64,000 nt of DNA from Lytechinus pictus (Eukaryota). The DNA is taken from the NCBI RefSeq assembly GCF_037042905.1, contig NC_087259.1:9176001-9240000 (forward strand), in the 5' to 3' direction. The notes beneath the pieces are model-generated. The model had not been told where the DNA came from, searched no databases, and saw only the letters and a program-made list of their open reading frames with translations. Below, piece after piece: positions 1 to 60,532 of the stretch; the stretch's first letter is position 1; the number at the start of each line of letters is the position of its first letter. A program made the position numbers and the translations under genes.

Positions 1-400
1 TCTTCTCATTTTATTCTTTCCAATAAGATTGCTTCTCTTCTTGGGTTTTGGTTTCCTTTAATGATGAACGGTTGCCAGCTATGTGTTAAGACAGGTTTTA
101 ATCTTTTCTTTAACGTAATCTTGTTCTTTTGGCAAGAAACGAAACGTTCTGCTATTTGAGTAAAACGCAAACGTGCGTGAGCCAATTTTACTTCAATTTG
201 ATTTTGTGTGTGCGCAGCACAAAGCGAAAGACGAGCTCAGCGCGGTCAAACGGGTCACATTGTTAAGCCCAAGCCTATTTATTATTCTTTAATGACTTCT
301 TGTTTTGATCAGGTATTTGTTCGTAACTCTTTATTCAGGACTCAATGACGGTGACAAGCTGGCAGAGACAGAAGGAAAGAAGGTATTACAAGGTACTCAC

Positions 401-596
401 CGCCATCGGCGGCATCAAGCAACATAGCCCTGCTGGAACGCGAGGCATCAGAAAGAGGACCGCTGGTGATGGTATGGGGTTTGGACCGGTAGCCCGCGGG
501 CTGGAGACTTCGGCGAGATCGTGAGAGGCACCCCTGCGTGCAGCGGGAGCCCGAGTCGTTGTTGTCACAGATCAGAATTGAGCAGTGGACGTAGAC
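401..596 (-). CDS. Gene A exon 31: ZP-C end, furin site, external hydrophobic patch
   Basis: tttcag|[65 protein letters not shown]|gtgagt; 196 nt, phase 0-1. Confidence 0.9.
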
Positions 597-1689
597 CTGA
601 AACGAGAATATACACCAGGAATCACTATGATTTTAAAAGGTAAGACATTACTTTAGGCTTTGATATCCTGATATCAGACACTTGACCTCATATACCAATG
701 AATTATGAAATCCGAAAATAGAGTAGAGCCTAGGCCTAGCCATGTTTTTAACAAATATGGATCTGGATGTAATACAGGTCTCACGCGCGTAAAACATTCC
801 CCCATAGACTTGTGTGTTAAAATGGCACTTAAGAAAAATTCATAAAAAATAAATGTGAAATTAGAGGGTCGAATGTTTACTACCTTTGGATAGGATATAT
901 ATCTGACATTCCATATCTGACCAGAGAAGGGTATCGTAGCCAGCTCATTTTAAAAATAAATCGCCATTTATGAAGATAACTATGATGGGATCAAATTCAT
1001 CAACTGAAACAGTAAAATAGCCCCAATTCTTCCGCCAGTCAAAAAATAGTTCCAAATCATTGATATATCTTCCCAATTTGGGCAAAGGAAGTTCAGTAGT
1101 TACCATTTCTAGAATCAGTGTTAGATTTTGAATCATATTCATACACTTTTGTCAATCAGCAATATCAAATTGAAAAAATTCGAATGGGTTGGGTCGAACG
1201 AATATCTTTAGCCCTCCTGATGTAATTAGGCTCATGGCACCTATATTATATGACCTATGAATTTTATTTTTTTAAATAGCTACTTTGCTATTCTTTTATA
1301 TCTGTACACTCACACTAGCACAAAGAAATGCATTGAAAATGCCTATTTTCTATGCAATGACCCATTTTAATGTGTTACTCATACATGTTATATTCACTAT
1401 ATGGATGTCTACATATCCTACCTGCATATAGCCCAATGGGTGAATGTAATGACAATATATATAGGCCCCTATTCTCCTAGTTATATAATGGTGTATGTAA
1501 ATTTTGTGTAGATATCAGGATACCATAACTGCCCCAAACATAATTACCAGATATACATGAAATTGAATGAGGAAACAAAAGAATGAGAACATATTACTAA
1601 TTAGTACATTTGCACTTGACCTATTATATCAAAATCTTCCTAGGGCTATTGCCTATCAGATGTAAGAAGGAAGAGATACATAAATAGAT

Positions 1690-1724
<35 letters not shown>

Positions 1725-19700: not shown

Positions 19701-22700
19701 ATGATCATTTTGTACAAAGTGGAATAAGTATGTAGATTTGTTAGATCTAAGGCTGCACGTGTTTGACTCGAAATCCCAAGCAAGCAAATCAAATTCACGA
19801 CAAAATTGGCGACGAAATTCGCGACGTCGTTAATTTCGTCGTGATAATAACTTCGTCGCGTATTTCGTCAATTTTCGCGACTTGGTCTATTTGCAATCCT
19901 GGGCCACTAGCCCCGTCTATAGAAGATTTACGCCTTGCAAGCTGCAGTGCGTCTACAATTATGTGTTTCGAGTGCAGTAAAAATAACTGATTCGTTTTGT
20001 AGGTACTATCAATGTTGTAGTTCGATTTTTTTTTCTCGAAAATTTCAATTTAGTAATGTAATTTCCTCGATGTTTTTACTTTGAGAGGGCCGAGAATCCC
20101 TTCATTTTTAAGGATTCGTCAGAGGGAAAAGCTTAGAAAGTTGACATAAGCATGATCAGGGAACATATGCAACCAGAAGTGAACCTTGCAAGGCCGCCAC
20201 AAGCTCAATCACTCTCGATGACGGTCTGCTTTCTTAAAATTGCCATTTAATGAATAATACATTTTGTTGATTTTTTTATTATTCTCGATGCTTATATTAC
20301 GAGTATGATGTTATTGATTCTCTTTGTATAATGTTATCTTGTATATTTTCCCCTGATGTGGACAGAGAAATATAATCAATCAATCAGTCAATCAATCAAT
20401 CAATCAATCAATCAAACCTCATCAGGAAGGGCATCATTTTCTGACAACCCCAAAAGAGAGGAAAATGGGTATAACATTTTGTCAGGGGGGGGGGGGGCGC
20501 TCTGACCCCTGACCTCACCCCCTCAGGTATGAAAACGATTGCAATTTGAAACCTTTAAAAGTGCTACAAATCGATTCTATTTAATATTGGTATACATGTA
20601 CATGTAGTTTTGAAAATGTATTCAAAATTTGTTTGAATTATTGATATTGCTCTAATTTAATTGTTTTTAATTATTATTGTATATATATATATATGTATAT
20701 ATATATTCCTTTCTTCGGTTCATTATATCACGGAAGAGGGAGTCCCACTTCCCTAATTACATCACGGGGATAATCTGCGTTCCGCTGAGCGCGGCGTTTT
20801 ACATGGTTCAGGTAAAAGTTGGTCATTCCAAGCAAGTTAGCGCGTAGATTTTAGTTTTGATTTATTACGAGTAGAATACAAAACAAACATACCACGCGAT
20901 TATTTCGAAAGTATAGTGGGAATTATTCGTCCTCGGTTGTACTTGCAAGAATACTCATTTTCACCTCGGAAAAATAGTAATTGGCAGCAGAACCTCGGAC
21001 ATATAATTCCCGCTCTAAACCTGGTATATTTGTATATTATGCTGATAATGGTCTGAAATAAGCTTCTTAAAAGAAACACGCAAAACTGACCCACGCGCAC
21101 GCTTAGAAGCAAACAGGTAAGTTTACTCGTTTTGAACTTGATTGTGCTCTATCAGAATTAATCAATATGATTTTATATTAATTTGTTATTAATTTGAAAT
21201 GTCAAACTACATGAATTACCATAATCGAATGATTTTTTATATGGATTATAAAGCAAATAATCACCGTTTGGTTTCAGTGATTCACTGATTCAACATTCAA
21301 GTCGCTTCGGAAAAGAGACAATGTCCCATCACATTTGGTTACTATTAACATGCTACCATTTCCATGCGAAAAACAGGGAATCATGTGTATTTGGATCCAT
21401 GATTGAACCGGTGGACTACACTCTGTTCAGCGGGCCTTCATTTTCTCATTTATTTTGAAATTCATAGTAAAAATCAGGGTAATACCTGTGTTTTCGTTAG
21501 TAAGACTTAAACGTAGTTGAAATCCTCTATAAGTGACTGAAGAGTCGGTGTAAAACATCATCCAACTTGGGGAAGAATATAATCTAAACAAAAGAAAATA
21601 TTAAGAACAAAATGAACAAAATATACATTAGTATTTCAATAATAAATCATGCTGAATTGTTAGCTGCAATCTGTAATTTATTCACTTATTTATCATATTA
21701 GGCGTGGATCAAGGGGGGGGGGGGCGAGCCGGCTCCGCCCCCCTATTTTTGACAACAAAAAAAAATGTCCTTTTAACTTGAGAGAAACGCTGAAAAACAG
21801 AAAGAAAGTACGATGGAGGTATTATACCCATGTTTAATAGACCAGTTCGTAGTTCATGGACAATTTTGGTCAAATGACCTTTCATTTCTTCAAAGTAAGA
21901 TCAAGGAGGTTTCAAATGAGATGGAGTAAAAGCAAATAAAATCCCTTTGAACAAGGTTAAAAACCGCCAGCAGAAAGTATGTCAGGCATGCACTTTGCTC
22001 AACATCTCTTTCAATTGTGTAGACAAATGATTCCCGCATGACTCCGCAGCTATATGTCATATAGAAAGGGAAATATGCTATTGTGATGATAATTTCTTTT
22101 TCGCCGCATCTGGTTTGGTTATATGTGTAGTACATAATTCGGAGGCATGCGAAAATAAACTATGCAACATGTCCCGAAATGACTCAAATTTATTCCACTG
22201 GGCATGTGCGGGCACTCATCTGGCATATACAATAATGAATAGCAATATTCCACAAACCACATTTGAAACTTTCATTTGCCGCAAACGATCGGAAAAGCGT
22301 TAAAATCTGGTTTCAGTAAAGGTCAAATTCTTACTTTTTCCACTAATTAAAGGTAAATCGATTTAATCAGAGCAAATATCTCAGCGCAATATTGCTTGGT
22401 TATTGATGTCTTGTCATGCGTTCAAATTTCAGTTTGTTTATTCAATAAAAGATGGAAATGAATACAAATGGTTATTCGTAAAATTTCACTCCTCGGATTT
22501 CTTCACTGAAACTGGCGGCTTCGAAGGCGGACATCAAAAAGGTCTTTACTGCTGTTCTTTCTTTTGTGCTTCTTTAGAAATGAACATCTGCCTGAATAAA
22601 TGTTATGCCTGTTGGAACTCCAGTCATAGAATCTTCTTGGCAAGATATTACGTAAGCTTGCCTTACATAGCAGGATGAAGAAATTGAATAGACCAGATGA

Positions 22701-25700
22701 CTTGAATAGCACACCAATGAACACTTTATGAATGTATTTGTTTTATTCCTACTTTGAATGCATATCATAGCATGTTGCTCAATGTACTTAGCAAACTGTG
22801 AAATACCAGTCGTTCGTGGACGCATTGTGGTTTTTGGGGATGTAAATGAAAACCACAATTCAAAAGAATATATAACTAATCAAGACATCAAAGTTGGTGC
22901 TTATCTCATTAGATTTTAAACCACCATGTCACTTTAGTACAAATGACCTTCCTCTGATCATGGACCTATGAAGAGATGGACGATTAACGCGAGCATTTCT
23001 TTGACCCAATGATAGTCACCGTCACCTGGTTATGCGCATCTTAATGAGAACATACTGGTGTTGTAACAATAGCAATTACCATGACTACCAAGGGTATCTG
23101 ATCACTCAAAGACGGAACAGTTTCCCGGTCTTGACTTTTGTTGGCTGATCCCCTGTTTCAGTATGTGCTTTCAGTCAATTTGCTTCATATACGGATCAGC
23201 AAACTTGAGAAGCAGACGATTTTTATGATATAAAATATGAAATTATTCGATCCGCTAACTACCGCTCACACATAAGGACCTCAATAACATTGAAAGATAC
23301 ACGATCTACACATGTTATGTGCCACGTATATCTGGAATATTATGGAGAAACTTGGGAAATTTGAATTTTAAATGGTAAACAATCAATCACAATATTGCCT
23401 CTATATCAAAATATGCAGACATTTCCCCAAATAAAACACATGGAACTAAGATTAACAAAGGTAAACAAAAACTGCACATCGATTATCCATTATTTCATTG
23501 ATTTTCTATCAACTGCGCATATAATTTGTGAAATATAAATGTCCAATAACGAACTAATTCAGTCCCTTCTCACGGTGACGATCATAGGACCAAAGAAGAC
23601 TAGTATGAAGAGAATGTTATTCAGATGACAATTACCGTCACCTGTTAGTGAATTCATTATCTAAGCGATGAATGTCCATCTCTTCATAGGTCCATGCTCT
23701 GATCATGCGTAGAATCTTTTGATCATGCGCAGAAACTACGAACTGGCTTATTTACGGCCTCGTAACTGCCGGTGTACCGGAGGATCCTGCGCCTGGCAGA
23801 TACTGTTCTAGGCACCAAATCCGCCGGCGGATCGTGTTCTACTCCGGCGGATTCAGTACCAAAAAAGGCCACTCTCTTCGGAAGATATTGTTCTTGCGCT
23901 ATCGCGATATCCTTCACTCACATACGTGGAGGTGCCGTGGCCGAGTGGTCTAGGCGGCCTGGCTATACATAGAAAGTCCGGGGTTCGATCCCCGGCCGCG
24001 GCACCTATGCCCGTGAGCCTGGAGGCGTATACTCTGCAACGCTCTTTTATCTTGCTTTCAAATAAATGGAAATGCTATATGCATTAGTGGTAACTATATA
24101 GGTGTGCACTGTTAAAAAAAAATACGTCTTGTAATAAAAAACACGCATTTTTAATTTATTTTATACCTATTAAATCCTTATTATCACAATTTTAGGGATA
24201 AATTGGATACAATATGCATCAATTATGATTGATACAGAGTATTAAATAAAGGCAAACAATGGCAGGATTTTGTAATAAGTTTTTTCAATGGAAGTATAGA
24301 TAATGATCACTGCAAATGAAATTCTTGATTTGCGAAATTCCTATGTATTATTATTATTTCCTTCACATTTTCTCGTATATTTTTTTCCTACTATTTAATT
24401 AGGGCTTATATGAAATTATTATTTATTCATGTTTTGTGAAAATAAAGCTTAGAAGTGACTGTAAGCAGGGTCAGGGACTACCCCTTCAAAGAAAGAAATA
24501 AAAATCAACTTTGAGCGGCCGATCGGGGAAAATATGGGTAATTTTTTTTTCGGCCCCCCCCCTATTGGCGAACGCTGGATCCGCCCCTGCATATCCGAAC
24601 AATACATGCAGATTGATGAATTAGGTAAATTGAATACAAAAACTACCCATACAGTAACCCCTCATAAATTTTGGTAAATCTGTATATTATCAAATTTTTG
24701 GTAAATGAACTTTCTTTTTCTGTTGTTGCGGCGCTTTGTTTTGAAATATTATAATGTGTCATAATTTCGGTGGGATGAAAGGTGTATTCTGCCCACTTTC
24801 TCAAATCAATAAATTATGGACAATAATGTCAATACAAAACGATTTCTTCGCATGTCATGAATTGCGCAAATGTGACAATGTAATGTACCGTAATAAAGTG
24901 GTTTATCAATGTTATGCAAATGTTTTTTATTATTAGTTCTCCAATTATGGATTGCATCAGTGAATCAATGAATCAAATTTGTCAAATTGAAATTTTGGCA
25001 AAGAATAAATGAGACGATGCTTGAGAGAGAAGGAAAGAGGGAGGGATAATGAGGAGGAGGGTGTGCCAAACTAGCAACACAGTAAAAAAAATTATACAAC
25101 GCTGTTTACTATATGAACCTTACAGTAATTGTTAAAACAGTTTAAACAAGTGTTTAAATCTTAAGCGGCAAAGTTTAATTTTCAATATTTAATCTTCAAT
25201 AAATTAAACATGATTGTTTACACTGTTAAACAAATAATGTAAGGTTCATATAGTAAACAGCGCTGTATAAGATCTTAAACAGCGTTTTTACTGTGAATGG
25301 GGCAAATGCCCATCCCCAAACAATATGCCTTGGGTAAGACTGAACGTGAACCTAGGGGGTGGGAGAAGGGACACAGGAGGCATACGCATCCCCTTGTGAC
25401 CCAGCCAGCTCCCGTGTTTTTATACCATCCCCCTTGGAAGTTAGGAGGGATGTTTCTTATGGAATGTTATGGTTTTGTTTTCAATTTTTGTTATACCTCA
25501 TTTGTTTTTGGTAATGAGAACATTTATTGGGATTTTGGTTGTCATTCCTCCAAACAAAATGAATAAATTTTTGAACAATGATACATGAAGTCACCAGTCA
25601 TTAATTTACTTGCCTGTTAGCTATAAATGACTTATCATGGGATAGATTTCAACCAAATATATGATTAGGATCTATATCACTATTGTTTCGCCTGCATAGC

Positions 25701-28700
25701 AGAGTGAGACAATAGGCGCCGCTTTTCCGACGACGGCGTCGTCAAAATGTATTACTGAACATCCTGCCTAAATTGAGGTCACATGACCGAGGTCAAATGT
25801 CAGTTAGTGTCAATGAACTTTATAGACCATGTTGATGGAATCAACATCAAAATCTTAACCGAAGGTTAAGTTTACAAATGCCATCATGACTTAAAAAGTA
25901 TATAGACCTAGTTTATAAAAACTTGGGCAAAAGGGTAGTCTAGTATTTCTGAACATCCTATCTGAGTTTCAGGTCACAATGTTCAAGGTCAAAGGCCATT
26001 TAGGGTCAATGAACTTTGGCCATGTTGGGGGTATTTGTTGATTCTCATAACTTTCAAAGTTTATGGATCTAGTTCATGAAATTTGGACATAAGAGTAATC
26101 AAGCATCAGTGAACATCCTGCGTGAGTTTCAGGTCACATGACCAAGTTCAATGAACTTTGGCCGTGAGGGCCAAATATGAACAATACGGTAATCAAGTAT
26201 CACTCATCGTCTTGCATGGTCACACCATCAAGGTCAAATGTCATTTAGGGTCCCTGCACATAGTATTTTATTATCATATGAATGATGTTTTTGTGAATTA
26301 TTATAGTATAGTCGTTTTCATAGTCAGTACTGCCGCTATATGCAGGCGAGACTGCCAGAGGCGCTCCACTTGTTAATATTATATTCTAAAAGCAAGAACA
26401 TACACAGTTTTTCACCCTTTTCACTTCATCGGGGCCTCCGTACGTACCTCATATCAGACGGTAGAGAAGAACCTGTGAGGGTAGCCAGGGTAGCACTTCC
26501 GGGAGACGACGGGGATTCTCCGATACCAATTCGGAGAAAATCACAGCATGATTCAAGCTTGAAGTCCAGAAAGTCAACTATAACATCGTAGCCTGGAGGA
26601 GCAGTGATGTACCAGTTATAGCGAACGTTGTTTGGATGATTCGAAGGATAGTTCTGAGAGGAGACGGTCTGAGCAACCCCAACCGCCAGAGTCACATTCT
26701 CCTCTGTTGGACAAATGTTAGAAAGTTTCACGTCATTTCACTGAGGATATTCATTGCTGCTACTTATTTTATTACAAGGGATACATATTATTCAAAAAGG
26801 AAAGTGGGGATGTGACATCATCAGCTCACCTAATGCATATTTATGAAGATGTGCATATAACTAATTTTCCAAAATATTTCTCAACTTTAAGATTCGATAT
26901 TTTGTTACCAGACGTTGATGGACTTTTCATCATTTTGCTCTGTGAATTTTAATATATTGGATGTCAATATTTTTCAGACATAAAATGGAGGGATGTAGCC
27001 GTAACTTTGGGTGTAATGGAAATTGAGGATCGGAAGGCAGAGGGAGGTCCAATTTCCATGGTGCGAGATTCAACCTCCTCTTTTATTACACTGTAAAATA
27101 TGGACAAATTTGAAGGATGTGCGTTGTTGGCTCAGTCGGTAACGCGTCTGCCCGTCGAACCAAAGATCGTGGGTTCGAGTCCACCCCGGGCGGATGACTG
27201 AAGCCAGTGCGTTGTGTGTAAACGTCTCTCCCATGTTTCATAGATGCAGGCTATGTTACAATGGAAAACACTCCGTCCCTCGGATAGGACGTTAAATGGA
27301 GGCCCCGTTTAGAGGAGAGTCACCACCTTTGCACGTTAAGAACCCACTGGACTATTCGTATAAGAGTCGGGGGGAAACCCCGGTGTAGTGGTCCACCTGC
27401 ATTCCCCCAATCAGTTATATCGGGAGGAGAGACCTGCGAGTCATAGTGATTCAGTTCGCTTTTCTCCTCCCAGGCACAGGTGCCGCCAAAACAAATTATA
27501 ATAATAATAATAATAATAATACTATTAATAATAACAATGCAAGTGTGTGTCATGTGTGTGGGTTGTTTTTTGTGCGAGTATGTCATGTCAACAATGGCTC
27601 TTAGCAGCACTTTAAATATTGACATGCAATTGTGTCGTGGGAAGACCGTAGATTTTCTTATTTTCCAATAAAACATGCAGAAGAAATTGAATCTTGTTAA
27701 AATCAGTTGATCATTTCACATAACCCATTTCCGATGTCCACCATTTGTTTTCCTTGTCCACTGTTTAACTTGGCAACTTGACGTTAACTCGAATATATAC
27801 GCACCTCCGACGTAAGGTGAGTTTGGTGTGCCCCACACCCATGTTGTATAATCAGGGCCATCTGGGGTCGGTCCTGAAATGAGAAAATCGAAAGGTATAG
27901 GCCTATTTGTTTTGAATATGAGGGACAATGCTTCTCCCCTACCCTCAACGTGATAGAAACGTATTCAAAAGCCGTCGTGCAATACTTTTGAACGCTGGTA
28001 ACCAAATAAACTATGTTTTTTCAAGGTTTCAAGGTTATTCGACAAGGTTTGAATCTGAATGATTATAGGCCTATGCATTTAAAACTGTTATTTGTTCATG
28101 AAATATCGATTTGTGGTTTACTATGACAAGCCCGTAGTCAGGGGGGGGGGGGTGGTTTGGGGGTTCGATTACCCCCCTCCCCTAAATGTTAAATAAACCC
28201 AGAAAAATAGGGGAGGGAAAACAATCTTTATAGGGGACAAAATGCTAGCCATTTTTGAACGATGACCCTTTTTTGTCAAATATTTCGGAGACGAAATGGC
28301 CAAGATTTTAGACCGATCGCAACGGGCTATGGCATTTTATGGGTTGTATGATCTAACAATGGATGTAGCGTTCACCAAACAGGACATGTATGTATTAGTT
28401 CAGCGCGTTTCTGTGTTTTACCATGGACCTATGAAGAGATGGACATTCATCGCTTTAATAGGTGACTGTAATTGTCATCTAAATAAAATTATCTTCATAC
28501 CAGTGTTTTTTGGTCCTATGATCGTCACCGTGAGAAAGGACCGAAGCAGTTCGTGACTGGACATTTATATTTCACAAATTATATGCGCAATAGATAACAA
28601 ATCACTTAAATCATGGAAAATCGACGTGCAGTTATTGATTACCTTTGGTAATCTTAGTTCCATGTGTTTTATTTGGGGAAATGTCTGCATATTTTAATAT

Positions 28701-31224
28701 AGAGGTAATATTGTGATTGTTTACCATTTAAAATGTAATTTTCCCAAGTTTCTCCATAACATTCCAGAAATACGTGGTACATAACATAAATAGATCGTGT
28801 ATCTCTCAATGTTATTAAGGTCCTTATGTGTGAGCGGTAGTTAGCGGATCGAATAATATCATATTTTATATCATAAAAATCGTCTGCTTCTCAAGTTTGC
28901 TGCTCTACATATGAAGCATGTTGACTGAAAGGCACATGCTGAAACAGGGTATCAGCCAACAAAAATCAAGACCGGGAAACTGTTCCGTCTTTGGGTAATC
29001 AGATACGCCTTGGTAGTCAGGGTAAATGCTATTTTTACAACGCATGTATGTCCTCTTTAAGATGCGCATAACCAGGCGACGGTGACTATCATTGGACCAA
29101 AGAAATGCTTGCGTTAATCGTCCATCTCTTCATAGGTCCATGGTTTTACCGAATGTTTTCTGTATTGAATAAGAAGCGGTGAAACGAGTGACATGGACTT
29201 ACTATCGGTATTCCACCACCACCATGGAGTCGTTTGTGGTTGCCATCTATTTTCCGTAGTAGATTCAGGTCCTGAAACAAACAGAAATAGTGAAAAGGAA
29301 TTTTATGATAGTTGATAACTTACACCTATATTCCAACAGGTAAAGCAAACAGGTGACAAACACAGTACTTATAAGAGTACCGAAGTGTGACGTCAGTTGC
29401 CATGGTGTCATGGCGGGCTGGTTCTAAACAGAGTCGCAGAGTACACATTTGTATGACACGCAGGCGACCCGTTCCAAGGACCCCCGTTTTCACAAACATT
29501 TGTAGTTCCCTCCTTTTTGCAATAAGCCCGCTCCAGAGCCCCCATTTTTTGTCTCGCCCGCGGCACATACATACCCCTTTTTTGGTCGAGTACGTGGTGA
29601 AACTCGTGGTGAGGAGATGGTCTGAAAAATAGGCTGCAAGCGATCAAATTCCGATAGCAGTCATTTTCTCCTATGAAAAACACACGCTTTCATTCGGCGG
29701 GTTCATTTGTTTTAGAACCAGGCCGCCATGACACCATGGCAACTGACGTCATCGCTTCGGTACTATATGCATACTTTAATTTACCGTATACCTTCTGTTA
29801 AAATTAAATTAGAAGTGATGGGAGTGAAGAAGACTTACGATCGGTATTCCACCACCACCATGGAGTCGTTTGTGGTTGCCAATTATTTTCCGTAGTAGAT
29901 TCGGGTCCTGAAACAAACACAAATCAGGAAAAAGGGAATTTCATAACATTTAATTCACAGATAAACCTTTATAACATAACGTTACATACATTTGTGCATA
30001 ATATCCGTGCGTTCTTTTACCAAAGGGTCTTTTGTGAAATCAAAGCGGCCTGTCATTGACAAATCATGGGGGAATTGAATCAATGACGAAATTTGCAAAA
30101 GGCCAATTGACTTGCATACTATAATCTGTCCGTCATGAGAGCCTGTCGGACTAATGCGATAAAAGTTCGGACAGCGCAAATTTGACCAAACTCGTGATCG
30201 TTGTTACTTCGGGTTTTCGCAGTTCTAGTTTCCAACAATCCCGATTCCTAGACTCTTAGCAGGTCTCTTGATTGCTAAACCAACTCTTTGAAGTTTTATG
30301 TTTCAAAGTGAAAAAAATGCAGTTTACTTTGGTTGGTTAGTCTACTAACTATTGCTCTCCTACATTTGACCTCCCAGACATGCCGGCGGCTATTACATAA
30401 CACCCCAGGCATGCAGCCGAGTGAAAACTTGAATCCCTTCTCTGTTCCGAGATTGGCCTTGATTTCCCTATGATTTGTCAATGGTAGGTTGCTTTAAATT
30501 AGAAGTGATGGAATTAATGATGTGGACTTACGATCTGTATTCCACCACCACCATGGAGTCGTTTGTGGTTGCCACCAACTGTCTGTAGTTGACTCAGGAT
30601 CTGCAGCAAATTCAAATCATAAAAGGAATATCATAGATCCTTGCTAATGATGTTGCCCTTTGTAACCGATGCGAGGGAACATAGGTAAGAGGCTTTTCCC
30701 GAAAGTGTTTAATCCTTCCAGTGAATATGCCATCACCGTGTTTGGAAGAATCAGGGTAGAGGAAGGAAGAAACGGGAAAGAAAGAAAAAAAAAAGACCAT
30801 AGAAAGGTAATACCTTGGTCACATTTGCTCTACGGCGGCCGTACGGCGAGTCGAAAACAGCCGTTTTATTAATTTTGATTCAAACCACCTAAATGTAGTT
30901 GGACAAACAATGACCATGGTATAAACGAAGAAACGGAACGAAACCTTTATTTCGTGCCCTGTCTTTCCCTCCTTTCACCGTCTTCTGTTTTTTCTTTCAA
31001 TGATTTTTTTGGCTACCCCAGCCCGCCCAAAAAACATGAATTCAGTTGGCTTAGACTTACTATCAGTATCCCATTGTCCAGTTGGTTGAGGCGTTGGTGT
31101 AGAATCTAGAAAGAAATGACAATGAAGAGAAATATAACCGAAAAAGGCATAGCTCCGTATGAATACAGAATAGGAAGAATCAAACCCGGTACTAAACAGG
31201 AACTAAGTTAACAATAGATAAAAT

Positions 31225-31261
<37 letters not shown>

Positions 31262-34200
31262 CCACACACACCTATATATACATACACACATACATATTGT
31301 GATGCCAAGTTAATGTTTGTGGCCATCATGGTCTTAATTTTGCTTCACGAGATGAACATGAATGAAAAAATATGTTTTCCTTGTGTTATTTGAAGCCCAT
31401 CCCAACGTTCATTATGCTCGCATAACTGAAATAGAACAATGAAGGAATGATTACCGAACATCAGTCATAACACTAAAGTGAAACTACTCGTAATTTTTTT
31501 TAACAATTAGGTTTTGTCAGCAATCTTAAATAACAACATTTGAAATATTACGAAAGTGATGTGGCTTTGGATTCCACAGTGAAGTCCAGTCCTGATGTGC
31601 AAATGAGCTTTCCACAAAAACACAATTTGAATAGTACTTAGAAATTGATACAAACCGTTGCAGAATTGGACATAATCATGACAGCAGTCACCGGCTACTT
31701 GACAGATAGAATCGCAGTAGCAACCCCCCATGTTACCGCATCCACAACACCTTTGGCAAGACGTATCTTTTAATAAAGTAATAGAAAACATCAAAGTGAT
31801 ATTAGCCTTTCTAACGGAATACGGCCCCGTATCGGCCTATGCTACCACTGGCATGGTTTCTTTTAAAAAAGGATACAAATTTCTAGATTTTAATGTCAAA
31901 CGACACATCTAAGAAAGGATCGTGTTTAAATGCAGTTCAAAAAATCTAACGCAAGTCTCTCATTGAGTGTTTCTGGTTAGTTGAATATTATTTTGTTTTT
32001 GAAGTTTGCAGTCACATTTGATTGCAACTCCTTCTGCAAAGGTCACCAGGACCCATCGCCTATGTTTCACATTATCATGGTTATTGGTGTAAATATTTTC
32101 TCTTGTAAAATAATTTATTCTCGAACAGTACGGTCATCATTTCTAGTAATGTTAAAGGACAAGCCCACCCCAACAAAAAAGTTGATTTGATTAAAAAGAG
32201 AAAATTCCAACAAGCATAACGCTGAAAATTTCATCAAAATCGGATGTAAAAGAAGATTTTTTTTTACATTCTAAAGTTTCGCTTAAGTTCACAAAACAGT
32301 TATATGCACATCCCGGTCGGTATGCAAATGAGGAAAGTGATGACATCACTCACTCACTATTTCTTTTGCATTTTATTATATAAAATATGAAATATTCTAA
32401 TTTTCTCCTCATTGTCCTGTGAAACAAAGTTTTATTTCTCCCTGAACATGTTGAATTACCATTGCTTAACATTTTATGGTTCAGTCAAGTTGGTCCTTAT
32501 TGTCAAATCTACAAAAATAGAAATTATGTATAACTCGAATAATGAAAAACAAAATAAATAGTGAGTGAGGGACATCATCGATTCTCTCATTTGCATGTGA
32601 CTAAATTGTGCATATAACTATTTTGTGAAAAATAAACGAAACCTTAAAATGTCATAACTTTCTTATTTTACATCCGATTTTGATGAGATTTTCAGCATTA
32701 TGCTTGTTTGATTTTTCTCTATTGATTCAAATCAACATTTTTATGAGGTGGACTTGACCTTTAATGAATGACGAATGATTCAGCGACACCCCATCTATGT
32801 CTAATTTGAATAATGACACGCACTAGCGTACCTAAGGGGGGAGAGGGGGCAGACTGCCCCCCCCTGACGAGTCACAACTCATGCAGGGGACGTACCCCTG
32901 CCCCCCTGACGAGTCACAAGTGATCCAGGGGACGTTCCGCCCCCCATTTTTTTTGCTTGTCAATGTCCTTTATTTGTGGTTGAAGACCTTTTTTTTTTCC
33001 TTGTCAAATTTTTTCGCGGACGAAATATCCTCCAAAAAATTTGCCCCCCTTTTGGAAAAATCCTGGGTACGCCGCTGAGGACACGTATGTAATTCGTACT
33101 GTAGGATGAAAATCTCAATGCAATCTGGATTTGATGTAAATTTTGAAAACCGGCGTTCGCAAATAGTCGCCCATATGAATAAAATGTCATGTACTAACCT
33201 GGGGTTACATGTATGCCGTATGGATTCTGGAAAGTATCTGAATACTGTAAAGTATAGTTGTTGTCATAGAGTGTTGTGAAGCCAATTGCATCCAGATTCC
33301 AATCCGTCCATGCTATAGTGTAATTATTGATGAAAGCCAGGTCGTAAGGATGAATCGAAGATGTCGATAAATGAGTATCCCTGTAGTTGCCCCAAAGGTC
33401 AGCAGATTCGATTTTATCTGTTGAAGCGTCGCACCAGTAAATTCTGCCACCTGTTGGATGTTTTGTGAGCAGTATTAGAGACTAAAAACTGAACAATAAA
33501 GTAAAACCGTCGCCTGCCAGGAAGGATGCTATTGTTAAAATTATCTCAATTTCCCCGCCATTTTTCAATTGTAAAAATTGAAAAAGCTGTCATGACCTTT
33601 TCCTTCTACCATGCAATCTCGAACTTCGATGTGATGTCAGTATGGCGCTACAGGCTACATAACAAAAAAGACGCGAGCACCTTGATTCCAACGTGCTTAC
33701 GCACAAAGACCGATTCGCAACAGTGACCTTTTTCAAGGAACCGGATTGCACATGTTTGTTTCCTTGAAGAAAGATTATTTGAAAACCGAATCAGAAAATA
33801 TCACTGAAGAAAAAATTTTGCTCCTACAGAAAGTGTAAGAGCTTGGATGGAAAAAACCAATACACCACCAGCAGCTTAAAACTTCGGTTAAACAGTTTTT
33901 CTCAAAAAATGTAGATATCGCGCCCATGCGCTTCAGCGGCCTTTTTCCAGAGAGAGTTTAACCCCGGAAGCATCATTTGTGGACACGTTTGCTATCAATG
34001 ATGTATTATGGAAAAACACCCACACACTGAAACGCCCACCCTCCCATTCACCAAACATACCCACATACATTTATTTTGTGTGAATGACCAAATCACTAAT
34101 TTTGTTATTATACAGCTGACAAAAATGCGTGGAGAACCGATATTTGATAATGAAACCTTACCGTAGCTATTGAGATCCAACCCATTTGGCCAAACGACAC

Positions 34201-37200
34201 TGGAGTTAACAATGACACTTCTGTTCCCGCCATCAAGGTTTGCTCTCTCAATTCGTCCTGGGTCACCCCAATCTGTCCAAAACATCACTCTGAATAAGAT
34301 AGAAAATACTGAGGGTTAATAATGAATATTATTTTAAAAAATGATTTGTTGCTGTACTTTATTTATTTGTATTCTTTTAGAGAATCAGGAACTTGGGCCT
34401 ACTGGAGAACGGAGAACTTAAATCACCTCGACCTCCCGAAGATCCATCTTTTCATATGGATTAAATCCCGAAAATCCTCTAAATGTGTAGGTCCGCGTCT
34501 AGTCTATGTCCTGGTCAGACACACTCAGGCGTGTGTTTGATTGAATCCAAAAACGTGGACACTAATCAGAAACACTTCATGAGAAATGAGGACACCCTCA
34601 AACCTTGGACTATCCACGGTAAGAAAGGTAGAGCAAAATAACGCAAGTACACTGTGCATGCATGTGGCAAAGCAACAAAAAAATAACGATGCAATTGTAA
34701 GTTTTCACACCCTAATTGAGGACCTGTCCCCGTTTAGCAGTGAAATATCTGTGTGTGTAATCATCCACGTGTATGTGTATGGTAAAGAGCGCGGGGGGGG
34801 GGGGGTTTACTCACCCCATATTTTTGTGTACAACGATTGCACGTGGCTTAGACAAGTCTGTATTAATGAGAGTTTCCACGTTTGATCCGTCGAGATTAGC
34901 CGACATGATTTGGTCATAGGTTTCATCGGTCCAAAATATTTTACCACGACCCGTATCCAATGCAATGCCTTCTGCTCCTGATGTAAAAAAAAGAGAGTAC
35001 AAGAAAGATGATTGAAAGATAAGGAATGCAAACAGCAAATAAAAAGCTAGGTAAGGGAAATTAAAAAGTAACTATGAAGATTTTTTTAAAGTAAATATTT
35101 AGGGAGCTCTATCTTGATTTTACGTCTCACCTGCATCAACAGCACATCGGCGGCTTCAGTCGTCCAACAATACGACGCTCTACGGATTCATGAAGTCTGT
35201 TAATCTATTGAAAAACCCATTAAATGACAATGAACAGCTGGGAGGTCTTTGTAAAAAAAATCGTCCTAAGATTTGGAGCTGACGAAAAATGGCAAATAAT
35301 GTCGTTTTTTTCCAGATTCCAGGACGAAACTGGTGCTTTGATTCACCATTCTTCCACAATGAATTATTGGTTATTCATTGTCATGAAGGTTTTTTGACAA
35401 TACATTTTCTTTGTTTTTTTAATACGTCGTGCATCGTTTAGCGGAAACTCCCGATTGATGGAAGACTGAAGACACCGATGTGCTACAGATGCAGGTGAGA
35501 CGTAGAATCAAGATAGAATTGATTATCAAACATGACGCGAATTGAGAACAAAGAAAGAAGCACATCATTGATTCGAAAGGACTAAAAGGTGATGATAGAG
35601 AAGATAACGATAATATAAAATAAAAACAAAATAAATACATAGATTGGTATCGACGACAGTGATAGTGTGGTGATGATGATGCTTTTTATAATGAGAGAAC
35701 CGAGGACCGATTTAGAATTGTCGCATGGGGAAAATGAAAAAGATGCACCGAGCAAAGAATCTAATACAGCCTCAAGAATTCTATTTCTGCCGATTTTCTT
35801 GTATTATCCGACACTTCTGCCGTGGTAACGTTGTAAAATCTTGAGAAAACGATCCGAAGAAATTGTTTGCGTTTTGAGGTATTGCTATCGGAAAAGAAGA
35901 TGGCGGGTTGCGCACGGAATGATTTGATGATCCTTTAAAGGTAAAAGACAGTAGTTGCAGCAAACGATTATTTCATGAGAAAGTCTTTTAAATCAAGGTT
36001 AGTTGTCAAAATATTATCTTAAATCTAGATATGGTACATTAATGTAAACTTATCTTTGTAAAATAATGAAATCCCCGCTCTTGTTTAATTGATTGTTTAA
36101 TAATCATAATTGGTAAATACTATACATATATATTGATTAGAGGTTCTCTTTTGGAAACTGATCACACACATTTACTATTAACTAAAATGACATTGCACAT
36201 GCATACCCTCTTTCGATCCATTACTAATCTTTTGCCGATAACTACATTTTTAACCAACTATAATTATTTCATAAAATTGATAATTCTTAAACCAGACTTT
36301 AACTTTGACTTGTAATTCAAATAAACTTTAAATTGTGCGTGAATCATGTATACCTGGTTTAAAATAATTTCTTTATGTTGACATGTCTTCATCATTTTTT
36401 GTTTTTTTCTGTGTATACATTGTATCTGCATGTGTGTAAACCAGTGAAAATAGAATTTCCTTTATTGACAATAAAGTTATTCAATTCAATAATTCAGATG
36501 ATCACTAACACAGAAAAGCACATGTGGGACATAGTATTATTGCTTCGAAAAATACCCGACATTTGATGGAATTCCGTGCTTATTTTGCTCATTTCTCAGC
36601 AATCACGCATTTTCTTCCAAAGGTATTTGGCATATGATTTATTTATACATACAAACACTTTGGTGGTAATTCCATTGGATTCTGTTCGAACTAATTTGAG
36701 ATCGCCGGTTACCATAACTGGTGTTTATCTTTAAATGACTAATTACTTACTGCCCACAGAACTGTCGAGGATCACGCTCTGCATAGTACCATCAATTTTT
36801 GCACGTCGTATCGTTCCAGCCAAGTCGCTCCAGTACACCATACGAGTTTGAGGATCGTAATCCACATCCAGAGGTTGGTTCACCGACCCGATGGGCAAGG
36901 CAGAGAAGGTCAGAGATTCGAAATCTCCGCTGGAAAAGTCGGCCATGAAGATTTTACCCAGTGATTTGTCTGCTACAAATATCATCGCCTCCGCTGTAGA
37001 TGGCATGGGGAACACCGCAAATTAAAAGAAAGGATTACGAGGATACAGTTCAAAGTAAATATAAATTTAAGAATGTGGCCCGGTTATTGCTACGTTTCTT
37101 TTGCTTACTTATTTATTATTATATATCTATACATGTACAAAAAATCTGAAAAAATGCTTTTCAACAATGCCCTGCTGAAAAGAAATAAAGAAAGAAAAAA

Positions 37201-40200
37201 AAAGAATTACATAAATGATTATTAATATTGTTCATGGAAATAATTTCCTATTGACAAAAAATATATATTATTGCGTAGTCAAAAGCACTTTAAGAAAACA
37301 AAGTTTTGGTTATAACCTGTTTTTGTCCCGTGTTTCACGTCTTTCAAAGAAATAGAAATGGGTTCTAAACAGCATTTTTTGTGTTCTACAAGAAACCCCG
37401 TCGGGTTCTTTATACAACCTATGGGGCTTTTGATGGTGAGTAGGTTCCATTAGCAAAATATTGGGGTCTTTTCACCATCAGGAACCCCGAAACTTTATTT
37501 AGAACTATAATCAGTTTTTAAAGAAAAACTTCAAGAGGTTCAAAATACGGGACAAGGTAAGGTTCAAACATCAATAATCTACTTTTATACAGTGCGTCCC
37601 AGAAAAACGAAACCGAGATTTAGCGATGATTTATCATAACTTAATCTCAAATACAATAGACAAATGACCTACCATTGTAAAGCTTAGAATCTCCTCTTTC
37701 ATCTGAAATTACTTAGGGGATACCAAAAAGTCATTTGGCGGGCTGTATCTGGGTTTCAAAAAGAAAACCACATTTTTAAAAAGTTCAATATCTGTTCTTT
37801 AATTTGATACCTCAATTACAGAAAATGGTCAAGAAATAACAAAGTTCTGGTTATTTAAAAAAAAGGCTTGAATTTCAATGATTTCATAAAATGAAGAGGT
37901 TTTACAGGCTAGCGTTCAAACTCACTCGACACTCCGTTTTGTTGACGACCAGCCATGCATTAATTAAGTCTTTTGTTAACCGTGCGATAGCTTCTGTGGG
38001 GAAACCGGTGAAAGCACGTTTATTTAATTAAATTATGGAAATACAAGCATTGTTTCGAGGGAACATAACTTTTTTACTTCTTGACCATTTTCTGTGATTA
38101 CGGTATCAAATAAAAGAGCAGATATTGAACTTTTTAGGCATGTGATTTTCTTTTTGAAATTCAGACACCCCCCGCCAAATGAGTTTTGGGTATCCTTTCT
38201 TCAATTTTTGTTTGCTCACTCATGCGTGAATGAGGAATAATCTAAGTAATATCAGATGAAAGAAGAGATTCTAAGCTTTACATTGGTAGGTCATTTGTCT
38301 ATTGTATTTATGATTAAGTTATGATAAATCATGGCTAATTCTCGGTTTCGTTTATTCTGGGACGCACTGTATAGCGCTTAAAGGGATGGTCCGGGCTGAA
38401 AATATTTATAGCTTAATAAATAGAGTAGAATTCACTGAGCAAAATGCTGAAAATTTCATCAAAATCGGATAACAAATAAAAAAGTTATTGAATTTTAAAG
38501 TTTAGCAATATTTTGTGAAAACAGTCGTCACGAATATTCATCAGATGGGCTGATGATGTCACATCTCCACTTGTTCTTTTGTATTTTATTATATGAAATT
38601 AGGTTTATTCAAATTTTTTCCTCCAAGAACTAGAAAAATTGGATTGACAACTGATTTATTGCATTAGATATTTATTGCTGCAACTTATTTCATTATAAGG
38701 GAGACATATTATTCACACAAGTATGAAATAATGAAAAAAATATGGTTTTATATAATAACTTAAGAAAACAGAAAGTGGGGATGTGACATCATCAGCCCAC
38801 CTAATGAATATTCATGATGACTGTTTTCACAAAATACTGCTAAACTTAAAACTTCAATAACTTTATTATTTGTTATCCGATTTTGATGAAATTGTCGGCA
38901 TTTTGCTCAGTGAACTCTACTCTATGTATTAAGATATGAATATTTTCAGCCCGGACCATCCCTCTAATATATCAGAACGACGTCTCTTATATATTTATTA
39001 TTACCCCGGTCATCGGATCCTGACATGCCCGCGTAAAATATATGCACTTTCTCCAACACGAGTTCCAAGTCTAGATTGCTAGGCATACTACAACCTACCG
39101 GGTACCCATTTAACACCCAGATGGAGAGCGGCAAAGCGTAGATTGACGCTTTGCCAAATGACGCTAGGCCATAGTGGGGTTCGAATGTACATTCAAAATA
39201 GAGTGAACATTTAATGTACATTAATTTGAAATTAAAAATAAGGTGAAAGATACACAGTGATGTAATTTAGCATCCACTCCGTAACCAATACATAAATATA
39301 CGGTTTGGCCCCGAGTGGTATACTGTTCTTTTCGTTTTTATCTACATCAAATGTATACAGCCTACCTGATACATTGCCCGTCGCAGGAGTTGTCACATCA
39401 TAATCTATTAAATCAGAATTTTGAAGTGAAGAAAAAAATAGAGTAAGAGAGGGAGATGGGGAATTCATCTATTACCTAATCATACAGTTCTATAAGGTCA
39501 CCACTATCTTCACCACTATAAGAACGAACATATAACTCTGTATATATTTGATATCCTGAGGAAGCTTCCAAAGCCAAGGCTCTAAAGTGTGACAGAAAAC
39601 TCACATTTTTGGCAAAGAAACATTGAGGTCCTTTAGACTTGCTTGTGTTAACCATGTACACCTCAGTCTGATTTGGTTAAAGTCAAAGTGTCTCGGTTGT
39701 TATATAGGGTTGCGATATGAAACTGGGATTTCTAAAGCTTGGGTTACCGTCACTCCTGGGGGAAAAGGGTGACTATTTGGAGGAGAATAATTTTCATGTG
39801 CGTGTGTGTGTGGGGGGGGGGGGAGGTGGAGATTGATGATAGCGACCAAAATGGGATGTCATATGTATTCCCCATAAGATTAAACAGTAATTATATTTAT
39901 GCCACGTGAAATTAGTAACCTACCCACTGTGCATGATATAACTTGCGACATGTCTGGGTACCAGTAGCTGCTCGGGTAACAGTAAGAATATGTAGAACCA
40001 TTTGTAGCCGAATATCCGGGAGGACACGAAAACTGAACGTACACATACGATGAGTAATATGGTTGATCTGGTGATACTTCCACGTTTGAATCAACATTTG
40101 GAGGCGGGCAGTCTGTTACAAATATCGAGAATATAATTGATATGAAGCGTAAATTTGCAGAAAATGTTGAGATAATAATTTTGTTTTTACCAAAAGGGGT

Positions 40201-49510: not shown

Positions 49511-49669
49511 TCATTCAACGAAATTGTACGTTGCCGAGAAACCCAAAGACGATAAGTTCGAATTCGAAAAAAAGTTTATTCTAAGCCGGTTTCCGGACGA
49601 GACGTAACCGAAGGGGACGTGTTGACCACAGTATATGCTGCTGTAAAATCGCTGGTCGAGGTCTTTGAT
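49511..49669 (-). CDS. Gene B last coding exon: CUB2 C-terminal half and stop
   Basis: acgtag|[52 protein letters not shown]; 159 nt. Confidence 0.9.
   Translation of the reverse strand: MKDLDQRFYSSIYCGQHVPFGYVSSGNRLRINFFSNSNLSSLGFSATYNFVE

Positions 49670-60501: not shown

Positions 60502-60532
<31 letters not shown>

What the first reader, a model, noticed from the sequence alone, without database searches (positions are those of the whole stretch)
27805..31105. Tandem mini-exons encoding a tetra-tryptophan mucin-like repeat ([14 protein letters not shown])x3
Seen: three 69-nt phase-1 exons, none called in the ORF track, each with a (TGG)4 run. The [14 protein letters not shown] core is invariant, although exon 10 differs from 11/12 at synonymous sites and in the preceding residues. 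Only short intron flanks remain similar. Related Trp motifs recur in other linkers ([25 protein letters not shown]). Established: WxxW is the DPY19 C-mannosylation consensus, met by WWWW and WDIW, and Thr/Pro tracts are O-glycosylated. Inference: a sticker-and-spacer segment for self-association, gel or adhesive formation, or glycan/lipid stacking. I know no named domain for it.
Basis: partly seen in the sequence, partly recalled or inferred. Interest (0 to 1): 0.75.

Follow-up and report, generated by a model that had tools for sequence, protein, structure and literature searches.

The report
Tryptophan-cluster linker mini-exons in urchin glycoprotein
Three duplicated 69-base exons in a sea urchin DMBT1-like surface glycoprotein gene each add a 23-residue Thr/Pro spacer ending in four tryptophans; they look like real exons, one is shown spliced into RNA, they belong to a small Lytechinus-specific family of tryptophan-cluster linkers, and their biochemical role is untested.

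Summary
On the minus strand, three 69-nt phase 1-1 exons (30532-30600, 29839-29907, 29203-29271) have CAG acceptors and GTAAGT donors. Each encodes [22 protein letters not shown]. RNA-like contigs from two samples splice the CUB exon to exon 27805-27873 and that exon to mini-exon C at exactly these sites. Exons A, B and the upstream QWDTD exon show only exon-sized coverage, and no junction was displayed for them.

The host gene (about 40.1 kb down to 0.4 kb of the window) reads Sushi, YWTD, SMB, five linker exons, CUB, three SRCR, CUB, SRCR, ZP. This is a DMBT1-like mosaic, so the exons are best read as counterparts of DMBT1's 20-24-residue SID spacers.

What is unusual is 18% Trp. The module is not unique. 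The neighbouring paralogue, annotated in Lytechinus pictus, carries mini-exon linkers ending in WWQNTD, RWRWNTD and RWWWRTE. L. variegatus has seven tandem copies where L. pictus has about two. In those copies the exons are conserved, mostly through synonymous change, while the introns have diverged.

WxxW, the C-mannosylation motif, occurs only in the tetra-Trp variant and in YWDIW, so it does not define the family. No orthologue of this gene could be reached.

Verdict: a real, lineage-restricted new variant of a known kind of linker, with unknown biochemical function.

The parts
30532..30600 (-). Mini-exon A, 69 nt, phase 1-1. It encodes (N)[22 protein letters not shown].
   Evidence: CAG acceptor, GTAAGT donor and an open frame. 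The bin holding its 5' part has small RNA-contig depth, while repeat-free intron bins read 0. Its junctions were not displayed.
29839..29907 (-). Mini-exon B, 69 nt, phase 1-1. It encodes (R)[22 protein letters not shown].
   Evidence: Splice sites and frame. It is 65/69 identical to C and 57/69 to A. Exon-sized depth in X1 and X2.
29203..29271 (-). Mini-exon C, 69 nt, phase 1-1. It encodes (R)[22 protein letters not shown].
   Evidence: Its donor is verified by RNA-like contigs: the joint 27873 to 29203 skips 1329 nt with GT..AG on the minus strand, in X1 and X2.
27805..27873 (-). Linker exon D, 69 nt, phase 1-1. It encodes (R)[22 protein letters not shown] and lies immediately before the CUB domain.
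   Evidence: Both of its boundaries are verified by joints in X1 and X2. It is homologous to the PGWWTPTN(S/Y)PPV(G/E)E linkers that precede CUB domains in P0003 and P0036.
31061..31105 (-). Linker exon U, 45 nt, phase 1-1. It encodes [14 protein letters not shown].
   Evidence: TAG acceptor, GTAAGT donor and an open frame. Small exon-sized depth in X1 and X2.
31657..31764 (-). Somatomedin-B domain, coded just upstream of the linker run.
   Evidence: Pfam PF01033, E 5e-4, below the curated cut-off. The same Cys pattern is seen in the SMB domains of P0003 and P0036. RNA-contig depth of about 135 nt in bin 31649-31800.
26448..26703 (-). First exon of the CUB domain, just downstream of the linker run.
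   Evidence: Pfam PF00431, E 3e-9. The joint 26703 to 27805 appears in X1 and X2, and contigs of 905 and 3408 nt cover it.
18893..18946 (-). Related linker mini-exon R, 54 nt. It encodes [17 protein letters not shown] and lies before the three SRCR exons.
   Evidence: Predicted from splice sites and frame only. It matches the repeat profile (place 9194900-9194944 of contig C15). It was not checked against RNA.
12630..12680 (-). Related linker mini-exon Y, 51 nt. It encodes [16 protein letters not shown] and lies before the second CUB domain.
   Evidence: Predicted from splice sites and frame only. It was not checked against RNA.
378..40110 (-). Approximate span of the host gene: Sushi, YWTD blades, SMB, linkers, CUB, three SRCR, CUB, SRCR, ZP-N/ZP-C, and a C-terminal exon resembling the membrane-anchored tails of its relatives.
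   Evidence: Pfam hits on exon ORFs. tblastn of P0146, P0034 and P0036 against the window.

Best explanation
The three exons are tandem duplicates of an interdomain linker mini-exon in a large DMBT1-like extracellular glycoprotein gene of a Lytechinus sea urchin. The genome is inferred to be L. pictus. Each exon is 69 nt and phase 1-1, so it can be gained or lost without breaking the frame, and each adds one 23-residue unit. Together with exons U and D they encode a 106-residue, Cys-free, acidic segment between the somatomedin-B domain and the first CUB domain. That segment is 22% Thr, 18% Trp and 16% Pro, with 13 acidic and 4 basic residues. Shown here: the exon anatomy; splicing of C, D and the CUB exon in RNA-like contigs; the domain context; the same module as annotated mini-exons in the neighbouring paralogue; a change in its copy number between L. 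pictus and L. variegatus; and exons conserved far better than their introns. Inferred: by analogy with the 20-24-residue SIDs of DMBT1, the Thr/Ser/Pro parts are O-glycosylated and held extended as a spacer. Each unit then displays a terminal Trp cluster, the conserved element of the family, as an aromatic contact site for glycans, matrix partners or other copies. The number of such sites is set by exon duplication. In this gene the cluster has grown to WWWW, which creates one canonical C-mannosylation acceptor (WxxW) per unit. My odds: real linker exons of this gene about 0.9; all three included in mature mRNA about 0.75; O-glycosylated spacer about 0.6; Trp clusters as binding or association sites about 0.3.
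For: RNA: joints 26703 to 27805 and 27873 to 29203, GT..AG on the gene strand, in two samples. Depth times length in the exon D bins equals the exon length exactly. Bins holding U, A and B have small depth, while repeat-free intron bins read 0. Context: SMB, CUB, SRCR, ZP-N and ZP-C Pfam hits, and the Sushi-to-C-terminus map. [quoted passage not shown] It maps exon by exon at 95-100% to the same contig, 50-60 kb from these exons, with each unit as its own 63-66-nt exon. L. variegatus locus L007 has seven tandem 63-nt phase 1-1 copies with canonical splice sites. Those exons are 55-62 of 63 nt identical, while most flanks are near random; 5 of the 8 variable codons change only synonymously, and the two flanking Trp codons of each cluster are invariant, only the middle codon switching CGG/TGG (R/W). 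A differs from B at 5 synonymous and 3 non-synonymous codons, with none of the latter in the core. SIDs are 20-24 residues, Ser/Thr-rich, O-glycosylated, extended and variable in copy number (PMC3100851).
Against: The junctions U-A, A-B and B-C were not displayed, so inclusion of A and B rests on depth alone. The one raw RNA run laid (X21) had no reads on this gene. X1 and X2 are labelled only 'RNA? (a guess)'; the spliced joints are what argue for RNA. No annotated protein of this gene and no orthologue was found, so conservation is shown for the paralogous module and not for these exons. The core is 41/42 nt identical between A and B, although 4 of 5 conserved degenerate codons just upstream differ (Fisher p = 0.02). 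That fits gene conversion or an RNA-level constraint as well as it fits protein-level selection. Nothing tests glycosylation or binding.
Confidence: 0.72

Rival explanations
1. The Trp runs exist chiefly as C-mannosylation acceptors: DPY19 mannosylates the first Trp of each WWWW and of WDIW, and this modification explains why the motif is conserved.
For: There are three WxxW sites in the 106-residue segment and WDIW in exon Y. Two DPY19 loci in the genome score above the Pfam cut-off. The consensus W-x-x-W/C with the first Trp modified is established (PMC8433626, PMC9989928).
Against: The related units in the paralogue and in L. variegatus (GWWQN, RWRWN, RWWWN, RWWWR, PGWWTP) have no Trp or Cys at +3, so the family's conserved feature is not the consensus. 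Known substrates are mostly folded TSR and cytokine-receptor modules. Entry into the secretory pathway is only inferred here, because no signal peptide exon was identified.
Confidence: 0.25
2. The exons are cassette or copy-number-variable exons. Only some of A, B and C enter a given mRNA or allele, so stalk length varies between isoforms or individuals, as in the DMBT1 SRCR/SID region.
For: The exons are symmetric in phase 1-1 and of equal length, so any subset keeps the frame. Copy number of the sister module is 7 in L. variegatus against about 2 in L. pictus, with one decayed copy. DMBT1 alleles carry 8-13 SRCR-SID units (PMC3100851). Only the junction of C is documented.
Against: A, B and C all have strong splice sites, and the bins holding A and B show depth in both samples. 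The two RefSeq isoforms of the paralogue differ by a linker-plus-CUB block, not by skipping of the Trp-cluster units.
Confidence: 0.2
3. The Trp run has no function of its own. A neutral spacer exon was duplicated, and the run arose from mutation bias (CGG to TGG at CpG, or slippage of the TGG triplet) and is merely tolerated.
For: The sister units switch between CGG and TGG at one position, giving RWRW or RWWW. (TGG)4 is a short triplet repeat. The near-identity of the core at the nucleotide level could reflect gene conversion.
Against: A Trp cluster is kept in every one of about 15 units across two genes and two species, while neighbouring codons change synonymously and introns diverge. In the sampled DMBT1-like proteins of other animals, inter-SRCR linkers hold 0.8% Trp and no clusters, against 18% here. 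The P-WWWW-N-T-D coding pattern occurs nowhere else in 812 Mb.
Confidence: 0.12
4. These are not exons at all, only chance open frames or a decayed repeat inside a long intron.
For: No annotated protein of this gene was recovered from the protein collections.
Against: The donor of C and both sites of D are used in spliced contigs. All three units have canonical sites, the same length and phase, and an open frame. Homologous units are annotated coding exons in the paralogue.
Confidence: 0.03

Closest known systems
SRCR-interspersed domains (SIDs) of vertebrate DMBT1 / gp-340 / salivary agglutinin
   Same: Both are short (20-24 residue) Ser/Thr-rich spacers repeated between extracellular modules of an SRCR-CUB-ZP glycoprotein. 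SIDs are reported to be O-glycosylated and extended, and their unit number varies between alleles (PMC3100851). Here the units are 15-23 residues and lie in a gene with the same C-terminal CUB-SRCR-ZP logic.
   Different: SIDs sit between SRCR domains, whereas these sit between SMB and CUB, or before SRCR and CUB blocks. In 35 DMBT1-like proteins sampled, inter-SRCR linkers had 0.8% Trp and no Trp clusters, against 18% Trp here. No sequence homology to SIDs was shown. That each SID has its own exon is my recollection and was not checked here.
Trp-cluster linker mini-exons of the neighbouring paralogue (L. pictus XP_063966472.1 and XP_063966471.1) and its L. variegatus counterpart (locus of XP_041482233.1)
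   Same: They share the module plan: an acidic Pro/Thr start, a lone Trp, a TTP/TPT stretch, then a cluster of 2-4 Trp or Arg/Trp followed by N/R-T-D/E at the exon end. They are 63-66-nt phase 1-1 exons arranged in tandem in a Sushi/CUB/SMB/ZP gene.
   Different: Those clusters are WW, WRW or WWW, never WWWW. The units are 21-22 rather than 23 residues. They are 45-55% identical to unit A. The junction residue is Glu there and Arg here.
C-mannosylated WxxW motifs (TSR Trp ladders, cytokine-receptor WSxWS, mucin CysD domains)
   Same: The W-x-x-W spacing is met once in each tetra-Trp unit, in an extracellular-type protein, in a genome that has DPY19.
   Different: Those motifs lie in folded, disulfide-bonded domains. 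This segment has no Cys and looks unstructured. The motif is not conserved across the family.
Mucin PTS tandem repeats
   Same: Both are Thr/Pro-rich, repetitive and probably O-glycosylated.
   Different: From general knowledge, PTS arrays are long and usually coded in one large exon. Here there are 106 residues in five mini-exons, with 43% Thr+Ser+Pro and many Trp.
Trp/Pro-rich antimicrobial peptides (indolicidin, tritrpticin)
   Same: Both have dense Trp with Pro.
   Different: Those peptides are short, cationic and released by processing (general knowledge). These units are acidic, with 13 acidic and 4 basic residues, and are embedded in a mosaic protein.

Membership tests
DMBT1-like SRCR/CUB/ZP mosaic glycoprotein (host gene) | Group B SRCR domains, each coded by a single exon | tested here: met
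   Four exon ORFs hit PF00530 at E 1e-27 to 3e-33, each over a single open frame.
DMBT1-like SRCR/CUB/ZP mosaic glycoprotein (host gene) | CUB domains and a C-terminal zona pellucida domain | tested here: met
   Two exon ORFs hit PF00431 at E 3e-9 and 8e-11. ZP-C (PF00100) scores E 1e-12. ZP-N is weak at E 1e-3. The ZP and tail exons align to urchin 'DMBT1' proteins at 60-85%.
SID-type interdomain spacer | A repeated motif of about 20-24 residues rich in Ser/Thr, lying between extracellular domains | tested here: met
   The units are 23 residues. The whole segment is 43% Thr+Ser+Pro, has no Cys, and lies between SMB and CUB. The definition is taken from PMC3100851.
SID-type interdomain spacer | Dense O-glycosylation and an extended conformation | not testable with these tools
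   This needs glycoproteomics or biophysics on the native protein.
SID-type interdomain spacer | Sequence relatedness to vertebrate SIDs, which are Trp-poor | tested here: not met
   Sampled inter-SRCR linkers had 0.8% Trp and no clusters, against 18% here. So this resembles a SID in role, and homology is not shown.
C-mannosylation substrate | A W-x-x-W/C acceptor motif | tested here: met
   Sites at residues 31, 54 and 77 of the 106-residue segment, and WDIW in exon Y.
C-mannosylation substrate | A DPY19 transferase encoded in the genome | tested here: met
   PF10034 matches above the cut-off at two loci, on contigs C13 and C4.
C-mannosylation substrate | The motif is conserved in related units | tested here: not met
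   The paralogue and L. variegatus units read WWQN, WRWN, WWWN and WWWR, with no Trp or Cys at +3.
C-mannosylation substrate | Mannose actually attached to Trp | not testable with these tools
   This needs mass spectrometry.
Lytechinus Trp-cluster linker module (family proposed here) | A 45-69-nt phase 1-1 mini-exon with a Thr/Pro-rich body and a terminal cluster of 2 or more Trp followed by x-T-D/E | tested here: met
   A, B and C align with three units of P0036 and with exon R. L. variegatus has seven such exons. The profile search finds further copies only in this two-gene cluster of the genome, though it missed A, B and C themselves; the coding-pattern searches likewise hit only this cluster.

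The most novel reading that the evidence does not exclude
The Trp-cluster unit is an undescribed functional module: a glycosylated Thr/Pro spacer that presents a compact patch of 2-4 exposed, possibly C-mannosylated tryptophans. On this reading it serves as a multivalent aromatic binding or cross-linking site in the ZP-type extracellular polymers of toxopneustid sea urchins. Valency would be tuned quickly by exon duplication: three units here, seven in the L. variegatus sister gene.
Probability: 0.25. Interest if true: 0.6.

Novelty: new variant of a known kind. Interest (0 to 1): 0.45.

Why it matters
Linkers between extracellular domains are usually treated as inert Ser/Thr/Pro spacers. Here a linker family keeps a dense tryptophan cluster under apparent purifying selection. 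It is coded in freely duplicable mini-exons, and its copy number differs between sister species. If the clusters are contact sites or C-mannosylation targets, they would be a natural example of aromatic sites set at regular intervals along a glycosylated spacer in a secreted matrix or pattern-recognition protein. WWWW in an unstructured context would also be an unusual DPY19 substrate. On the practical side, the case shows that 63-69-nt repeated exons are missed by ORF tracks and broken by k-mer assemblers. If the Trp clusters turn out to have no special role, this is simply lineage-specific linker expansion in a very large urchin gene family.

Tried and rejected
1. I looked for the gene's own protein or an orthologue and found neither.
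- The ZP-C exon against 1.84 billion representatives gave at best a 70%-identical S. purpuratus YWTD-SRCR-ZP protein with no linker region, and the paralogue's L. variegatus counterpart at 62%.
- Three word-index searches returned only the paralogue (P0003 linker+CUB region; P0036 linker region) or were swamped by multi-SRCR proteins (P0034 SRCR+ZP).
- The length filter blocks exon-sized queries from reaching full-length proteins.
- The S. purpuratus locus of P0034 was withheld.
- The L. variegatus orthologue of this gene lies beyond the 10-kb flank of L007, and I could not walk to it without exact neighbouring proteins.

2. RNA evidence is limited.
- The single read-laying run showed junctions only for C, D and CUB.
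- The k=31 contigs stop 32 nt into exon C, plausibly because A, B and C share a 38-42-nt identical block. That explanation is my inference.
- The raw RNA run X21 had no reads on the gene.
- Run X5, from the second species, had no contigs on the mini-exons at 90% likeness or more. That is uninformative.

3. The profile search of the own genome did not list A, B or C themselves. I relied on pattern searches instead.

4. Pfam found nothing on the linkers, and Rfam and tRNA scans found nothing in the region.

5. Full-text searches for WWWW/tryptophan, C-mannosylation plus sea urchin, and Lytechinus plus DMBT1 found nothing describing such linkers.

6. I rejected an antimicrobial-peptide precursor reading because the units are acidic.

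7. I did not run structure or complex prediction.


Full report
**Observation**

The gene lies on the minus strand. (TGG)4 occurs three times there, at 29213, 29849 and 30542, against 0.01 matches expected in shuffled sequence. Reading the reverse strand gives three 69-nt units:
- A, 30532-30600
- B, 29839-29907
- C, 29203-29271

Each unit follows a pyrimidine tract plus CAG, is followed by GTAAGT, and is open in phase 1-1. The peptides are [44 protein letters not shown] and [22 protein letters not shown]. The codons split across the junctions give Asn (U-A) and Arg (A-B, B-C and C-D).

The repeat finder sees a 154-nt family with spacings of 636 and 693 nt and 73-74% identity. Similarity is concentrated in the exon and about 50 nt on either side. 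The rest of each intron is filled by inverted-repeat elements.

A and B differ at five synonymous and three non-synonymous codons. All three non-synonymous differences lie in codons 6-8, and the 14-codon core has a single synonymous change.

- U, 31061-31105, [14 protein letters not shown]
- D, 27805-27873, [22 protein letters not shown]
- R, 18893-18946, [17 protein letters not shown]
- Y, 12630-12680, [16 protein letters not shown]

**Are the exons spliced in?**

I had one search for sequencing runs and one laying of reads. No run holding the stretch is on record as RNA. However, contigs from two samples of one species (X1, X2) carry two joints, 26703 to 27805 and 27873 to 29203. Both have CT..AC on the plus strand, which is GT..AG on the gene strand. 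These joints splice the CUB exon to D and D to mini-exon C at exactly the predicted sites, so those contigs derive from spliced RNA.

In the two bins that hold exon D, depth times bin length equals 43 and about 25 nt at the contig's depth. That closely matches the exon's 43 and 26 nt in each bin.

The bins holding B, the 5' part of A, U and the SMB exon have small non-zero depth. Repeat-free intron bins (27486-27666, 28029-28390, 31106-31648) read zero.

The contigs stop 32 nt into exon C. A k=31 assembler would be expected to break there, because A, B and C share an identical block of 38-42 nt. That explanation is my inference.

The junctions U-A, A-B and B-C were not among the joints displayed. 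Inclusion of C is therefore shown, and inclusion of A and B is only supported. The raw RNA run X21 had no reads on this gene.

**The host gene**

Exon ORFs hit these Pfam families:
- Somatomedin-B at 31.66-31.76 kb (weak, below the cut-off)
- CUB at 26.4-26.7 kb and 11.8-12.1 kb
- SRCR at 17.4-17.8, 16.5-16.8, 15.5-15.9 and 8.8-9.2 kb
- ZP-N at 8.1-8.35 kb
- ZP-C at 6.4-6.6 kb

tblastn with urchin relatives adds a Sushi exon at 39.9-40.1 kb, YWTD blades at 33.1-34.3 kb and a C-terminal exon at 0.4-0.6 kb.

The gene thus spans about 40 kb and reads Sushi, YWTD, SMB, U-A-B-C-D, CUB, R, three SRCR, Y, CUB, SRCR, ZP. [quoted passage not shown]

The spliced U-A-B-C-D segment is 106 residues long. 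It is 22% Thr, 18% Trp and 16% Pro, has 13 acidic and 4 basic residues, no Cys or Lys, almost no aliphatic residues, and three WxxW sites.

**Organism and relatives**

The window is contig C15:9176001-9240000 of an 812-Mb genome. C15 is 31,298,000 nt long. That is the length recorded for the contig carrying P0036, NCBI 'DMBT1-like isoform X2 [Lytechinus pictus]'. P0036 maps exon by exon at 95-100% to C15:9114282-9132000 on the plus strand. I infer that the genome is L. pictus and that P0036 is a neighbouring paralogue, not an orthologue.

The annotated P0036 protein contains the same kind of unit:
- TTSDPWSTNRTTPTGWWQNTD
- EPTADPWTDRPTPTRWRWNTD
- QPTSDPWTDRPTPTRWWWRTEG
- the CUB-preceding linker PRTEEPVTNPGWWTPTNYPPVEE, which matches exon D

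Each of these is coded by its own 63-66-nt exon. An alignment of these units with A, B, C and R shows the shared plan: an acidic Pro/Thr start, a lone Trp, a TTP/TPT stretch, then a Trp or Arg/Trp cluster followed by N/R/T-T-D/E at the exon end.

In L. variegatus, the locus upstream of the P0036 counterpart (L007) holds seven tandem 63-nt phase 1-1 exons with canonical splice sites. They encode (E)PTADPWTDRPTPTRW[R/W]WNTD. L. pictus has one intact and one decayed copy at the corresponding place.

Among these copies the exons are 55-62 of 63 nt identical, while most 120-nt flanks align near the random level. The orthologous pair between the two species has 62/63 in the exon against 85-89% in the flanks. 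Five of the eight variable codons change only synonymously, and one position switches between CGG and TGG, giving Arg or Trp.

The module is therefore a conserved, selected coding unit with unstable copy number.

Within the L. pictus genome it appears confined to this two-gene cluster:
- The P-WWWW-N-T-D coding pattern occurs only at A, B and C.
- WWW-T-T-D occurs only at R.
- P-T-x-W-x-W-N-T-D occurs only in the paralogue.
- The profile search finds only cluster members, although it did not list A, B and C themselves.

**What it probably does**

The nearest concept is the SID of vertebrate DMBT1. SIDs are Ser/Thr-rich motifs of 20-24 residues between SRCR domains. They carry most of the O-glycans, are thought to be held extended, and sit in a region whose unit number varies from 8 to 13 between alleles (PMC3100851).

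Position, length, composition and copy-number behaviour all match. I therefore read A, B and C as spacer exons that lengthen the stalk between the N-terminal Sushi/YWTD/SMB part and the CUB/SRCR/ZP part.

The Trp content does not match. In 35 DMBT1-like proteins from other animals that the searches returned, inter-SRCR linkers held 0.8% Trp and no clusters. No Pfam family covers the units, and full-text searches found no description of them.

The conserved Trp cluster at the end of every unit suggests a contact function. Candidates are aromatic stacking on sugars, on a partner or on other copies. That is inference only.

**C-mannosylation**

The consensus W-x-x-W/C with the first Trp modified is established (PMC8433626). 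It is met once per tetra-Trp unit and in YWDIW, and the genome has two DPY19 loci.

The sister units (WWQN, WRWN, WWWN, WWWR, GWWTP) do not meet the consensus. C-mannosylation may therefore be a property gained by this variant, but it cannot explain why the family keeps its Trp cluster.

**One unexplained detail**

Between A and B, four of five conserved degenerate codons in PESTT differ, but only one of nine in the core does (Fisher p = 0.02). This points to gene conversion confined to the core, or to a constraint on the RNA such as exon definition of a mini-exon, acting in addition to selection on the protein.

**Limits**

No orthologue of this gene and no annotated protein for it could be retrieved. 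Exons R and Y are predictions from sequence alone.

**Verdict**

The feature is real and accurately described. It is a lineage-restricted, Trp-cluster variant of the familiar Ser/Thr/Pro linker exon in a DMBT1-like gene, expanded by tandem exon duplication. It is moderately interesting. The unusual part is the conserved tryptophan patch, whose function remains open.

Noticed in passing
window 27126-27520: A roughly 360-nt interspersed repeat ending in (AAT)n sits in the intron between exon D and the CUB exon. The own genome gives at least 2174 first-look candidates, and the listed copies are 95-98% identical. In raw RNA run X21 it has about 3000-fold depth on one strand against about 100 on the other, and 267 molecules end at 27126. 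It has no Rfam or tRNA match. It looks like a young, actively transcribed SINE-like element.
   Followed up: partly
window 29388-29751; 28420-29144; 30037-30500: Inverted-repeat (MITE-like) elements fill the introns between the mini-exons. Their arms are 41 nt at 98%, 34 nt at 88% and 39 nt at 79% complementary. All have contig depth in the hundreds to thousands in both species, and variant internal sequences appear as 'letters between' joints at 29439/29620.
   Followed up: no
L007:566-5493 (L. variegatus, GCA_018143015.1, CM031029.1): Seven tandem 63-nt Trp-cluster mini-exons lie here, where L. pictus (C15:9124920-9125184) has one intact and one decayed copy. Two pairs of the L. variegatus copies have 88-99% identical flanks and so are very recent duplications.
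   Followed up: yes
window 49500-63600, minus strand: An ADAMTS-like gene with TSP1 repeats and a CUB domain lies directly upstream of the DMBT1-like gene on the same strand, judging by ORF translations. The scan also noted it as s1-329231.
   Followed up: no
window 18150-18185 and 13213-13248, minus strand: Two further candidate 36-nt phase 1-1 Thr/Pro mini-exons without Trp ([11 protein letters not shown] and [11 protein letters not shown]) lie near exons R and Y. They are predicted from splice sites and frame only.
   Followed up: no
window 13303-13317, plus strand: A (TGG)5 run lies on the opposite strand to the gene. In that frame it is flanked by stop codons, so it is not part of the linker family.
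   Followed up: partly
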